Of a stretch of DNA of 64,000 bases, positions 48,196 to 52,876 are shown one piece after another (the stretch's first letter is position 1; every line of letters starts with the position of its first letter). The DNA lies in NCBI GenBank assembly GCA_907165135.1, contig OU015569.1:5394001-5458000 (forward strand). The letters are read 5' to 3'. The notes under the pieces were generated by a model, which was not told the DNA's origin, did not search any database, and saw only the letters and a list, made by a program, of their open reading frames with translations. A program made the position numbers and the translations under genes. The DNA comes from Oikopleura dioica (Eukaryota > Animalia > Chordata).

Positions 48196-49020
48196 ATCGG
48201 ACGGGACGTCGTCGAACGCCACGTTGAAGCACAGCAATGTGAACAGGTCAAGGAGTATCCATTTAATCTGGAAGCCGTCAAATCGTCCCGCAGAAAAGAC
48301 AAAATCCATGGACCATGAAATCTTTGTCGCGATGGCAATATGACGGATTTCAGATTTGCAAGTTACTGCGCTAATAAGTGGGGAACTCATATGAGACAAA
48401 AAATAAAAAAAAAACAGAAAGTTGATCCGTAGTCACTGTGACTGGAATGGGGTTCAAGTTGGAACTTTGTTCAGAAATATGATTCGGTAAAAGATCACTT
48501 TAATTTAGTAAAAACACTGTTTTTTTTAGGTTGGCCCATCATTTGTCCTTTATAGGCTCTTAACTGGTAAGAGATAGGACTATATGATCAATAGTAAACT
48601 TGTAGAGGAGGGTTTGGAGGTGGTGCAGAGGGGGTTTAGAAATTCTAGAGGTCACGTGGTTATTACGTAATATGGGGGTAAAGTTGGTAAAGTCGGAATT
48701 GGAGAATTTTAGGCCATATGAACCTTATATTTATAGTTTTTATTAATTATTAATCATGTGACTTAGATGAGTCATCATAGCTCTTCCGGAGGACTCACCT
48801 GGTGGAAGACCGTTCCTGGAAGACAAAAAAAATTTTCTTTTGTATAACAATTAACAATTGCAAAAATTAGAATTTTTGTCATGTGACTTAATCTGACGTC
48901 ACAGAAGTCCTCCGTAGGACTTTTTCCTTGAAAACAAATGGTGGAAGACAAAAAAAAATATAAAAAATGAAAACCATAATTAAGCAAGAAACAAGGGATA
49001 ACCTGAATTTTTATATGCAT

Positions 49021-49040
49021 GGGTGTGGGTGGGGTTGGGG
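49021..49040 (+). other. Canonical G-quadruplex motif
   Basis: GGGTGTGGGTGGGGTTGGGG has four G-runs of 3 or more with 1-3 nt loops. Confidence 0.6.
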
Positions 49041-49079
49041 ACGAAACTGAGAATGATCAACTCAGATTTCCCAGCCTTT

Positions 49080-50592
49080 GTCAAGCCCCTTAAATTTAAA
49101 AATCAAGGAACGGGGCTGAAACGGCCCGAAGGGCCGTCAAGCCCCTTAAATTTAAAAATCAAGGAACGGGGCTGAAACGGCCCGAAGGGCCGTCAAGCCC
49201 TTAAATTTAAAAATCAAGGAACGGGGCTGAAACGGCCCGAAGGGCCGTCAAGCCCCTTAAATTTAAAAATCAAGGAACGGGGCTGAAACGGCCCGAAGGG
49301 CCGTCAAGCCCCTTAAATTTAAAAATCAAGGAACGGGGCTGAAACGGCCCGAAGGGCCGTCAAGCCCCTTAAATTTAAAAATCAAGGAACGGGGCTGAAA
49401 CGGCCCGAAGGGCCGTCAAGCCCTTAAATTTAAAATCAAGGAACGGGGCTGAAACGGCCCGAAGGGCCGTCAAGCCCCTTAAATTAAAAAATCAAGGAAC
49501 GGGGCTGAAACGGCCCGAAGGGCCGTCAAGCCCCTTAAATTAAAAATCAAGGAACGGGGCTGAAACGGCCCGAAGGGCCGTCAAGCCCCTTAAATTAAAA
49601 ATCAAGGAACGGGGCTGAAACGGCCCGAAGGGCCGTCAAGCCCCTTAAATTAAAAATCAAGGAACGGGGCTGAAACGGCCCGAAGGGCCGTCAAGCCCCT
49701 TAAATTAAAAATCAAGGAACGGGGCTGAAACGGCCCGAAGGGCCGTCAAGCCCCTTAAATTAAAAATCAAGGAACGGGGCTGAAACGGCCCGAAGGGCCG
49801 TCAAGCCCCTTAAATTAAAATCAAGGAACGGGGCTGAAACGGCCCGAAGGGCCGTCAAGCCCCTTAAATTTAAAAATCAAGGAACGGGGCTGAAACGGCC
49901 CGAAGGGCCGTCAAGCCCTTAAATTTAAAAATCAAGGAACGGGGCTGAAACGGCCCGAAGGGCCGTCAAGCCCTTAAATTTAAAATCAAGGAACGGGGCT
50001 GAAACGGCCCGAAGGGCCGTCAAGCCCCTTAAATTTAAAAATCAAGGAACGGGGCTGAAACGGCCCGAAGGGCCGTCAAGCCCCTTAAATTTAAAAATCA
50101 AGGAACGGGGCTTAAACGGCCCGAAGGGCCGTCAAGCCCCTTAAATTAAAATCAAGGAACGGGGCTGAAACGGCCCGAAGGGCCGTCAAGCCCCTTAAAT
50201 TTAAAAATCAAGGAACGGGGCTGAAACGGCCCGAAGGGCCGTCAAGCCCTTAAATTTAAAAATCAAGGAACGGGGCTGAAACGGCCCGAAGGGCCGTCAA
50301 GCCCCTTAAATTTAAAAATCAAGGAACGGGGCTGAAACGGCCCGAAGGGCCGTCAAGCCCCTTAAATTTAAAAATCAAGGAACGGCTGAAACGGCCCGAA
50401 GGGCCGTCAAGCTCCTTAAATTTAAAATCAAGGAACGGGGCTGAAACGGCCCGAAGGGCCGTCAAGCCCTTAAATTTAAAATCAAGGAACGGGGCTGAAA
50501 CGGCCCGAAGGGCCGTCAAGCCCCTTAAATTTAAAAATCAAGGAACGGGGCTGAAACGGCCCGAAGGGCCGTCAAGCCCCTAAAATTTAAAA
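49080..50592. repeat. Minisatellite: 27 copies of a ~56-bp unit (52-56) containing a GC hairpin and an AT palindrome
   Basis: Consensus AAGGAACGGGGCTGAAACGGCCCGAAGGGCCGTCAAGCCCCTTAAATTTAAAAATC. I counted 27 AAGGAACGG starts from 49105 to 50540. Variation is almost only in C/T/A homopolymer length. Confidence 0.98.
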
Positions 50593-51065
50593 AAGAAAAA
50601 GAATTTTTGTTCTTCCAGCAAATTTCTTCCAGTAGTTGAGTCCTCCGGAGGACCTCTGGAATGTTAGCTTTAGTCACATGATAAAATCTAACATATGAAT
50701 GAATATTATTTTTTAGAAAATTAAAATTTGTGTTGGTCTTCCAGCAAAGTTCTTCCACCAGCTGTATCCTCCGGAGGACCATCAATGAGTCATCGATGTC
50801 ACATGACTTATTTTTCATTTAAAATGTTAAATTATAATGGCCCCATGACCTTAAATTCTCAATTTACGACTTTCCCAACTTTGGGCCCCTGTTACGTCAT
50901 AACCACGTGACCTCTGGAAATTCTCAACCCCCTCTGCACCACCTCCAAACCCTCCTCTACAAGTTTACTATTGTTCATATGGTCCTATCTCTTACCAGTT
51001 AAGAGCCTATAATGGACAAATGATGGGCCAACCTAAAAAAAACAGTGTTAAAGCTAATTTAAAAT

Positions 51066-52876
51066 CTAGTGCCAGCTGAAGACGACGTTTAAAAAGGGAA
51101 CTAACAAAAAGAATGGGCAGCTGATAGTGGTGTAAGCTAATGTGACCGTAGCAATGAGGGAGGAGATATTGGATTGAATGAAGTTGCCTTCCGTCGCGAG
51201 CTTGCCAGAGAGGAGCGCAAAAGCGGCGGCAACGACGGCTGTCGCAGGATCGATAACGACCACTGTGTTGGAGAGGTTAGAAAGGATGGGGATGGTGGCC
51301 AGGAAAGGTAGATAGATCACGTGGTAAAATGCCCACATGAAGCCATTGCCTTGGATTTTGGTGGAGTAATCAGCTTCAGTCATAACTTTATAGCTGGTCA
51401 GGAGCACATTCAGAAGCGCAGCTGCAAAGAGGGCCAGATTGTCGGTGTTCCAGGCGGCGAGGGAGGGCATGATCAGGATCAAAGTGATTATTTCTCCAGC
51501 ACGAGCAAATCCTCGCTAAAGGGAAACGTAAGCTATGAACATGATACCATCAAGTATGACTTACCGCGCAGATCTTAGAGTTGTCGAACATGAATGACTG
51601 GAGGTAGTTGTGGAGCCAAGAGAACGAGAGTTTGAAGTCTAAAGAACATCTCAAATCGACGATTCATTACTCGTTTCTTACCCGAATTGGCAGAGTTTCC
51701 CACAAGGCTGTAGGCTGAAATAAAGAGGAGGGCAGTTTCGCCAATGGCGCTGGAGTTTTCGTTCACGAAGTTAGCTGGCAGGGCAAAGACAGCGGCAGAG
51801 ACAATGGCGATAATGGTGGCGAGGAAAAATTGCTGATTTTTAAATCGTGGCTTCAAGTGCTAAAATAACGATTTGCGGAAAGAAAAAGATATTGATGCTT
51901 ACCAAGACAGAGCCGACAGCAATGAGGAGGGCGCCTGCCATTTGGGTGCTCTGCTCTTGGACATTGAACGTTTTAAAGGCGTAGAAGCAATAAAATGTCC
52001 ACACGAAAAGAGCTGGGGCGACGTAAATCTGAAATATTTTTCTGCTGATATGTTGCTAAACTCGTAAAATTACCGTAAGAAGCGTTCCAATAAACTTGCA
52101 AAAGGGGTTGGCATACTTCTCGAACCATGGGCAAGATTGTGTGGCAGGAGCAGTCGACTGTTCCTGATCGTCTTCGTCTGCTGAGAACTGTTCGACTGGG
52201 ACCGGTTCGGCTTTAACTGGTGCTTCTGCTTCTTTTTTCTTCGCGATCCTAGTCGACTTTCGCTGAAATAGAAAATTGAGACATAGATGACTCGAGAAAG
52301 TCTTACTCTGTAGCTGTCCTGAAGGAGTTCTACTTCGATGGGAACATCGTCTCGTCTTCGACCTCGAGATCGGCTTCGCGATCGACGGATACGAGCTCGT
52401 CCTTCAGCTTCTCCGGCCACATTCGCCCAGGCATAATCAACCGGATTCATGTCAGCAGATGGTGTTTGCTTCTTTGAGGTGGCGCGGGCACGTGACTTTC
52501 GAACGGTGGGTTTCTCCTCACGTTCTGGGGAAGGGGACTCCTCTCGCTTGACCGGTTTGACTGTTTGGACGTTGACTGTGCTCTTTCGTCCACGTGAGCG
52601 GGATCGATTTCGGGAACCAATCGCTTTCACATGGGCAAAAGTGAAGGTCCCTAAAAATTAATTTAATATGAACCATTCGCAATTTTTCGGAATTTCATGA
52701 TAGACTTGATAATGAGAGTTACCTTGCTTCTGTTCACCATTATCGTCGACGGTCATGACTTCGTAGCCGTAGCCGCGAACGAGCTTGATGACCGACCCGT
52801 TTCGGTACTCGCCTTTGCGACCATCGTCTCTCTCGACATAAACCACCACCGGGTCTCCCGTCTTTCGGGTGGGCAT
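51066..52876 (-). CDS. LBR: Lamin B receptor-like protein (Tudor-like N-terminus, RS region, degenerate ERG24-type TM domain)
   Basis: MPTRKTGDPVV resembles LBR MPSRKFADGEVV, followed by two RSRSRSRG stretches. The TM region has EADYSTKIQGNGFMWAFYHVIYLPF, similar to LBR [29 protein letters not shown]. Confidence 0.8.

What the first reader, a model, noticed from the sequence alone, without database searches (positions are those of the whole stretch)
48513..51049. Foldback-like transposon carrying a homogeneous cruciform-prone satellite array
Seen: ~450-bp TIRs (outer ~160 bp near-identical, inner part more diverged) with CACTG...CAGTG near the tips enclose ~120 bp of unique sequence and a 1.5-kb array of 27 near-identical units, with no coding capacity. 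The TSD is not clean (left AAAA, right TTAA). Established: foldback elements with internal tandem repeats can seed satellite DNA (for example Tetris in Drosophila virilis), and CACT(A/G) termini with subterminal repeats typify the CMC/CACTA group. Inference: a possibly undescribed non-autonomous family acting as a mobile satellite vector; the array is much more homogeneous than the TIRs, implying recent or ongoing amplification.
Basis: partly seen in the sequence, partly recalled or inferred. Interest (0 to 1): 0.75.

Follow-up and report, generated by a model that had tools for sequence, protein, structure and literature searches.

The report
Satellite-carrying cut-and-paste transposon, minor carrier
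This is a real 2.5-kb non-coding jumping gene, most likely in the tunicate Oikopleura dioica, that carries 27 copies of a 56-base hairpin repeat; the same repeat cassette sits inside at least five other transposon families in this genome, so this is one more example of the known link between transposons and satellite DNA.

Summary
Window 48513-51049 is a 2537-bp element with 442/446-bp inverted arms, about 125 bp of leader and a 27-unit 56-bp array. It has no coding capacity.

- The target-site duplication is clean once the tips are read as AACACTG...CAGTGTT. It is AAA on both sides.
- A second copy on another chromosome is 97-98% identical, has 38 units and is flanked by TTT. This shows transposition, not local duplication.
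- Fourteen of 14 elements with RACASTG(T)8 tips have perfect 3-bp duplications.
- A 5.6-kb single-copy element shares the tip and carries a spliced gene for a transposase-like protein that matches no Pfam family. It is the candidate mobiliser.
- CACTA/CMC membership is not shown.

The satellite does not belong to this family. At least 1457 units lie across the genome, and the leader plus array also sits in another 3-bp-TSD family and in four hAT-like (8-bp TSD) families. This family is a minor, secondary carrier.

The arms' divergence is the same in both copies, so it is not an age clock. Array turnover since the copies split is real.

The scan found the same cassette several times on other DNA of this genome. 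This is a new member of a known kind (tandem-repeat-containing MITEs).

The parts
48510..48512 (.). Left copy of the 3-bp target-site duplication (AAA)
   Evidence: Sequence read directly. Homology with the second copy begins at 48513.
48513..48954 (+). Left inverted arm (442 bp). The tip AACACTG(T)8AGGTTGGCCC is followed by two subterminal repeat blocks.
   Evidence: Arm-to-arm alignment is 80.5% overall, with the outer 150 bp at 96%. The tip is shared with ~380-bp MITEs and with the 5.6-kb candidate autonomous element.
48781..48794 (.). Subterminal palindrome, degenerate copy of GTCCTCCGGAGGAC
   Evidence: All four matches in the 64-kb window lie in the arms, at mirror-image distances from the tips (268/394 and 270/396 bp).
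48907..48920 (.). Subterminal palindrome, second copy in the left arm
   Evidence: Genome-wide the exact 14-mer occurs at 47 sites against 0 in the control.
48955..49079 (+). Leader of the satellite cassette. It holds a G-quadruplex-type motif GGGTGTGGGTGGGGTTGGGG (49021-49040) and a hairpin CTGAG-N9-CTCAG (49047-49065).
   Evidence: The first look gave 193 and 230 candidate loci with the leader in two searches; scored hits were about 80-85% identical and several abut arrays. It is 70-82% identical between carrier families. The motifs are read directly from the sequence.
49080..50593 (+). Array of 27.4 units of the 56-bp hairpin repeat
   Evidence: Tandem Repeats Finder, fold, unit map. The exact 31-nt unit junction occurs 1457 times in the genome against 0 in the control.
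50604..51049 (-). Right inverted arm (446 bp), ending ...CCT(A)8CAGTGTT
   Evidence: Homology with the second copy ends at 51049.
50640..50653 (.). Subterminal palindrome GTCCTCCGGAGGAC, exact copy
50766..50779 (.). Subterminal palindrome, second copy in the right arm
51050..51052 (.). Right copy of the 3-bp target-site duplication (AAA)
   Evidence: Sequence read directly.

Best explanation
The stretch is a non-autonomous cut-and-paste DNA transposon, here called family A. It has tips AACACTG(T)8AGG, long imperfect inverted arms with repeated subterminal motifs, and a 3-bp target-site duplication.

It belongs to a small group of elements in this genome that share the tip RACASTG(T)8A. Most members are ~380-bp MITEs.

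Inferred: it is moved in trans by the protein of a related full-length element. The candidate is a single-copy 5.6-kb element at C4:8391899-8397511. It has the same tip and TSD length and carries a spliced gene for a ~600-aa transposase-like protein.

Between its arms, family A carries as passive cargo a cassette that is far more widespread than the family itself. The cassette is a ~125-bp leader (G4 motif plus hairpin) followed by tandem copies of a 56-bp double-hairpin unit.

Inferred: the cassette entered the middle of a foldback-type MITE by nested insertion or by template switching during gap repair. The composite then transposed at least once, giving two copies that differ by about 2%.

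Shown: the array has since changed length (27 versus 38 units) and the window copy has a private variant block. Inferred: this happened by slippage or unequal exchange, probably helped by the hairpins.
For: Two copies, transposition:
- The two copies have unrelated flanks, homology ends exactly at the tips, and the TSDs are AAA and TTT.
- A 246-bp MITE made only of the family A tips has TSD AAT.

Family signature:
- Fourteen of 14 complete RACASTG(T)8 elements have perfect 3-bp TSDs.
- The tip pattern occurs 39 times against 1 in the control.

Candidate partner L066:
- 169-bp TIRs at 87% identity and TSD TAA.
- Its first 21 nt are identical to the family A tip, and there is a shared TTTGTCC box.
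- Its three gene pieces are collinear with the 612-aa protein P0002, which NCBI lists as an Oikopleura dioica product.
- A 41-nt GT-AG intron restores ...DFAMG..., as in P0002.

Cassette elsewhere:
- Family C has 3-bp TSDs.
- Families B, E, F and G have 8-bp TSDs.
- At least 1457 units occur genome-wide.
- Leader-only forms with a single unit exist.

No coding capacity in the element. The array maps differ between the two copies.
Against: - Trans-mobilisation by L066 is inferred only from about 36 nt of tip similarity and the equal TSD length. Its protein has no recognised transposase domain. The AlphaFold model is poor (pLDDT 57) and the fold search was uninformative.
- How the cassette entered family A is not shown. 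No TSD or own TIR marks its borders.
- Most unit variants are homopolymer-length differences in what appears to be a Nanopore-based assembly, so fine-scale array maps are uncertain.
Confidence: 0.8

Rival explanations
1. The leader-plus-array cassette is itself (or was) an independent mobile element, for example the end of a rolling-circle Helitron/Helentron-type non-autonomous element whose terminal hairpin was multiplied. On this view it inserted into the centre of a family A MITE, and family A is only the landing site.
For: - The cassette's left border is sharp and the same in six or more carriers.
- The last unit is a shared degenerate variant in families E and F.
- Monomeric forms, leader plus a single unit, exist.
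- The unit holds a GC-rich hairpin near its end.
- Helentron non-autonomous elements with central satellite-like repeats are documented in the oyster (PMC7492417).
Against: - No cassette was seen outside a TIR/TSD-bounded carrier among the 14 array loci I resolved.
- No TSD or diagnostic Helitron termini were found at its borders.
- The right border falls at different phases of the unit in families A, B and C.
- No Rep/helicase partner was looked for.
Confidence: 0.12
2. The two copies arose by segmental or ectopic duplication of a local inverted duplication, not by transposition. The 'TIRs' would then be a structural accident.
For: Only two full copies exist, and the arms are only 80% alike.
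Against: - Homology between the copies ends exactly at the tips, and each copy has its own perfect 3-bp TSD.
- The same tips bound MITEs and a 5.6-kb element elsewhere, all with 3-bp TSDs.
- The pattern is 39-fold above the control.
Confidence: 0.02
3. The array, or its length, is an assembly artefact of a long-read assembly.
For: - Most unit variants differ only in homopolymer length, a typical Nanopore error.
- The published Okinawa assembly that this genome appears to match is Nanopore-based, and its authors note that tandem repeats are hard to assemble (PMC8008620).
Against: - An array of 1.5 kb is far shorter than the read lengths reported in that paper.
- Arrays of the same unit occur at dozens of loci with consistent borders.
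- A run of five identical 'E' variant units is unlikely to be random error.
Confidence: 0.05

Closest known systems
Tandem-repeat-containing MITEs (DTC84 of the clam Donax trunculus and pearl-type elements of oysters; PMC3879986)
   Same: Both are non-autonomous elements with flanking inverted repeats that act as a 'cassette' around a central array of core repeats. In both, the repeat number varies between copies and each repeat holds a palindrome proposed to drive length changes.
   Different: - The DTC84 abstract reports up to five core repeats, a linked microsatellite and a putative AA duplication. Here there are 27-38 units, 440-bp arms and a 3-bp TSD.
- Here the same repeat cassette is shared by carriers with two different TSD lengths.
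Tetris foldback transposon of Drosophila virilis (PMC4079207)
   Same: Both are apparently non-autonomous and foldback-like. Both share their TIR tips with a MITE (DAIBAM there, the 246-380-bp MITEs here), probably through a common autonomous element. Both carry tandem repeats.
   Different: - In Tetris the ~220-bp repeats lie inside the TIRs and also form kb-size free satellite arrays. Here the array is central and in one orientation.
- Here the unit is 56 bp and no free array was seen in my sample.
- The repeat was not born in this family.
Cg_HINE non-autonomous Helentrons of the Pacific oyster (PMC7492417)
   Same: In both genomes, satellite-like arrays are dispersed genome-wide as the central repeats of non-autonomous elements, in different combinations of flanks and repeats.
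   Different: The carriers here are TIR elements with 3-bp or 8-bp TSDs, not Helentrons. One repeat family is combined with many kinds of flank.
CACTA/CMC superfamily
   Same: 3-bp TSD, CACTG-like motif near the tips, long arms with subterminal repeats.
   Different: CASTG starts at base 3 and its middle base is free. The candidate partner's protein matches no CACTA-type Pfam family.

Membership tests
Tandem-repeat-containing MITE / non-autonomous TIR transposon | Terminal inverted repeats | tested here: met
   Arms of 442/446 bp, with the outer 150 bp 96% identical.
Tandem-repeat-containing MITE / non-autonomous TIR transposon | Target-site duplication, and copies at unrelated sites | tested here: met
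   TSDs AAA, TTT and AAT at three insertions of family A tips. Fourteen of 14 elements in the wider tip group have perfect 3-bp TSDs.
Tandem-repeat-containing MITE / non-autonomous TIR transposon | No transposase gene | tested here: met
   No Pfam family above cut-off in any internal ORF.
Tandem-repeat-containing MITE / non-autonomous TIR transposon | Internal tandem array of variable copy number | tested here: met
   27.4 units here and 38 in the sister copy.
Foldback elements | Long inverted arms, often with subrepeats, that make up most of the element | tested here: inconclusive
   The arms are 35% of the 2537 bp, or 87% of the non-array part. They are only 80% alike and have two subrepeat blocks each. 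'Foldback-like' is a fair description.
CACTA / CMC superfamily | CACTA/CACTG at the very termini | tested here: not met
   The tips are AACACTG or GACAGTG. The motif starts at base 3, and C/G at its centre varies even between the two ends of one element (L060).
CACTA / CMC superfamily | 2-3-bp TSD | tested here: met
   3 bp in 14 of 14 elements.
CACTA / CMC superfamily | CMC-type DDE transposase in the autonomous partner | tested here: inconclusive
   The candidate partner's protein pieces and its 612-aa relative give no Pfam hit at all. The structure model is too poor to classify.
PIF/Harbinger | 3-bp TSD of the form TWA | tested here: not met
   Only 1 of 14 TSDs is TAA. The rest are AAA, TTT, AAT, ATT, ATA, TAT, ACT and AAG.
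hAT | 8-bp TSD | tested here: not met
   Family A has 3-bp TSDs. Other carriers of the same cassette (B, E, F, G) do have 8-bp TSDs.

The most novel reading that the evidence does not exclude
The leader-plus-hairpin-array cassette may not be inert cargo. It could be a self-propagating module that moves between unrelated transposon families, or one that they keep because its G4 and hairpin structures help their transposition or repair.

The signature would be arrays that stay nearly identical between carrier families while the adjoining leader has diverged by 20-30%. That pattern implies exchange between dispersed arrays or selection on the unit.
Probability: 0.12. Interest if true: 0.7.

Novelty: new member of a known kind. 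Interest (0 to 1): 0.35.

Why it matters
The element is a clean, datable example of a transposon carrying a satellite array: two copies about 2% apart, with arrays of 27 and 38 units. It lies in what is most likely one of the smallest animal genomes.

Together with the other carriers, it shows that this genome's 56-bp hairpin repeat is spread by transposons of at least two mechanistic classes rather than by free arrays.

The side result may be of more lasting use. A group of 3-bp-TSD elements has a candidate autonomous copy whose protein belongs to no described transposase family.

None of this changes current concepts. The transposon-satellite partnership is well documented in bivalves and Drosophila, and the scan had already found this cassette several times in this genome.

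Tried and rejected
Smaller requests worked.
- I looked at the 13.6-kb long-TIR element named in earlier notes as a possible partner. The end I fetched (L055) has no similarity to the family A arms and none of the subterminal motifs. Rejected.
- The ESM Atlas lead DUF7869 / DDE_Tnp_ISAZ013 was not confirmed. It did not hit by hmmscan at E up to 10, and the six-frame genome search with PF25273 did not hit the L066 locus.
- The word-based protein search with P0002 found only P0002 itself.
- The structure of P0002 has mean pLDDT 57. Foldseek against the PDB gave no match with E <= 0.001. A few scattered RNase-H-fold proteins appeared at weak scores.
- Rfam gave only a sub-threshold chance hit.
- Metagenome scans for the unit junction and for the tip were blank. 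This says little.
The pieces were searched apart.

Full report
**Setting**

The window is G000:C2:5394001-5458000 of a 64.28-Mb genome in 19 contigs.
- Its ORFs include metazoan domains: RA, and a secretin-type 7TM receptor.
- Size and scaffold number equal those published for the Okinawa Oikopleura dioica assembly OKI2018_I69, 64.3 Mbp in 19 scaffolds (PMC8008620).
- The closest full-length relative of a protein found during this work is listed by NCBI as an Oikopleura dioica product.

I therefore take the genome to be O. dioica. This is an inference, not a direct identification. Nothing here looks human.

**Observation**

- Tandem Repeats Finder reports one array at 49080-50593: period 56, 27.4 copies, 97% matches.
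- The inverted arms are 48513-48954 and 50604-51049. They are 80.5% identical overall. The outer 150 bp are 96% identical and the inner part about 72%.
- Each arm holds two copies of a block containing the palindrome GTCCTCCGGAGGAC. All four matches in the 64-kb window lie in the arms, at mirror-image distances from the tips. Genome-wide the exact 14-mer occurs at 47 sites against 0 in the control.
- Internal ORFs give no Pfam family above cut-off. Rfam gives nothing above threshold.
- Two units fold as DNA at -28.4 kcal/mol, z = -5 against shuffles.

The description is therefore right, and the coordinates are exact.

**It is a transposon, and the TSD is clean**

- A search of the whole genome with the outer arm finds a second full copy at C4:10735442-10738612.
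- Homology between the two loci begins and ends exactly at window 48513 and 51049.
- With tips AACACTG...CAGTGTT, the flanks are AAA|...|AAA in the window and TTT|...|TTT on C4.
- A 246-bp MITE at C3:1596153-1596398 consists only of the two tips and is flanked by AAT.
- The non-array parts of the two full copies are 97.4% and 98.1% identical.

This rules out a local inversion-duplication and a segmental duplication.

**The wider group and a candidate mobiliser**

- The pattern RACASTG(T)8A occurs 39 times against 1 in the control. Most pairs bound ~380-bp MITEs.
- I read eight more elements, and all have perfect 3-bp TSDs: AAT, ATT, AAA, AAA, ATA, ATT, ACT, AAG. Two more from family C have TAT and AAA.
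- Relaxing the T-run exposed a pair 5.6 kb apart, C4:8391899-8397511 (L066). It has 169-bp TIRs at 87%, TSD TAA, and its first 21 nt are identical to the family A tip. It also shares a TTTGTCC box.
- L066 carries three ORF pieces that are collinear with residues 1-293, 345-431 and 512-592 of the 612-aa protein P0002.
- Between the first two pieces lies a 41-nt GT-AG stretch (L066:3163-3203). Removing it gives ...DFAMG..., the same motif as in P0002.
- The protein has no Pfam family. It has only 12 relatives among 1.8 billion representatives. The gene is single-copy in this genome, with four distant paralogues.
- The AlphaFold model is poor (pLDDT 57). Its strand-helix order around the DF...D...HGKG..DG motifs is compatible with an RNase-H-like core, but the fold search was uninformative.

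L066 is therefore a plausible autonomous partner. Its superfamily is open:
- The 3-bp TSD fits CMC.
- The tips do not strictly fit CMC.
- Only 1 of 14 TSDs fits the TWA rule of PIF/Harbinger.

**The satellite does not belong to this family**

- The unit search gave 245 first-look candidates.
- The exact 31-nt unit junction occurs 1457 times. That is about 82 kb, or 0.13% of the genome, for this variant alone.
- The ~125 bp just upstream of the array, the 'leader', recurs at many loci: the first look gave 193 and 230 candidates in two searches. The scored hits were about 80-85% identical, and several directly abut arrays.

Reading the flanks of other arrays shows the same leader plus array in the following carriers:

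| Family | Tips | TSD |
|---|---|---|
| C | GACAGTG(T)8AAATTGCAC | 3 bp |
| B | CAGGGTGGGG... | 8 bp (GCAAGGAG) |
| E | TAGGGCTTCCG... | 8 bp (TGCATAAT, TTCATGGA) |
| F | CAGTGTTGGAAAA... | 8 bp (GATAGAGA, AGTGTAGC) |
| G | TAGGGTTCGCAC... | 8 bp (GCTAGCGT) |

- One array locus (L067) could not be resolved.
- All 14 array loci that I could resolve lie inside TSD-flanked TIR elements. I saw no free array.
- Two loci carry the leader followed by a single unit. The array therefore looks like an amplification of the last ~56 bp of a ~170-bp module.
- Family A holds about 65 of the at least 1457 units, so it is a minor carrier.
- Its arm is itself a mosaic:
  - bases 1-36 are shared with the MITEs and L066;
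  - bases 117-161 are shared with family C;
  - bases 119-312 are 70% similar to a 4-bp-TSD foldback MITE family.

**Homogeneity**

- The arm-to-arm divergence is the same in both copies, so it is a built-in feature and not a clock.
- The array has changed since the copies split. It has 27 versus 38 units, and a run of five 'E' variant units is present only in the window copy.
- Most other variants are homopolymer-length differences and may be Nanopore errors.
- Between carrier families the leader is only 70-82% identical. Yet the majority unit is identical in families A, B and C, differs by one base in E and by about five in F. This points to exchange between dispersed arrays or constraint on the unit. 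I could not separate these two.

**Mechanism**

Shown:
- transposition with a 3-bp TSD;
- absence of coding capacity;
- a shared tip with a gene-bearing element;
- the cassette inside carriers with two different TSD lengths (3 bp and 8 bp);
- array turnover.

Inferred:
- trans-mobilisation by the L066-type protein;
- entry of the cassette by nested insertion or by template switching during gap repair;
- hairpin- or G4-promoted slippage as the cause of the length changes.

**Comparison and novelty**

The closest described things are:
- tandem-repeat-containing MITEs such as DTC84 (PMC3879986);
- the Tetris foldback element, which shares its TIR tips with a MITE (PMC4079207);
- the oyster's Helentron-borne satellite-like arrays (PMC7492417).

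This element meets all the defining features of a tandem-repeat-containing MITE. It differs from Tetris in that the array is central, the unit was not born in this family, and no free arrays were seen.

The scan's earlier notes on this genome describe the same cassette in other carriers (s1-371373, s1-350394, s1-409209, s1-330359). My own loci confirm that picture. They add the 3-bp-TSD tip group and its candidate autonomous element.

I found no paper in the held library that describes this repeat in Oikopleura. That library is incomplete.

**Limits**

- There were no reads and no second individual.
- Own-genome searches are exhausted.
- The array sample was drawn from the best-scoring hits and is not random.

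Noticed in passing
L066:200-5812 (G000:C4:8391899-8397511): A 5.6-kb single-copy TIR element with TSD TAA. It carries a spliced gene for a ~600-aa Cys-rich protein with DF...D...HGKG..DG motifs. The protein has no Pfam family and only 12 relatives among 1.8 billion representatives. It may represent an undescribed transposase group.
   Followed up: partly
L065:264-4014 (G000:C5:~6064263-6068013): A ~3.75-kb foldback whose 1.75-kb arms (94% alike) are opposed arrays of a different 57-bp unit. That unit shares only the CCCGAAGGG loop with the 56-mer.
   Followed up: partly
L014:1261-2286, L015/L016, L011/L012 (C1:~3616004, C5:~3088369, C5:~6919542): Foldback MITEs of about 1.03 kb with 450-bp arms 97% alike and 4-bp TSDs (ATAT, TCAG, TGAA). 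They are 70% similar to window 48631-48824, so the family A arm is a mosaic that shares a segment with a family of different TSD length.
   Followed up: partly
L070:1540-1700 and L071:1540-1710: The leader is followed by a single 56-bp unit and no array. These are monomeric forms of the cassette and suggest that the array arose by amplification of the module's last ~56 bp.
   Followed up: partly
window 49021-49065: The leader contains a canonical G-quadruplex-type motif (four G-runs with loops of 1-3 nt), followed by a 5-bp-stem hairpin just before the first unit. Both are conserved across the carrier families.
   Followed up: no
L070:1026-1105 and 2278-2353: An inverted repeat built of tRNA-like sequence (GGTTCGAATCC T-arm motif) flanks a monomeric cassette.
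   Followed up: no
L051:1604-4747, inside the hAT-like element L051:1431-4913: Within carrier E, the cassette lies between inner inverted repeats of about 230 bp (GTCACTTGTCGA(T)8...). These contain the same GTCCTCCGGAGGAC palindrome as family A. A smaller element may be nested inside the hAT shell.
   Followed up: partly
window 51066-51482 (minus strand): A 138-aa hydrophobic ORF ends 17 bp from the element's right tip. The element may therefore sit in or just after the 3' end of a gene. The ORF has no Pfam family.
   Followed up: no
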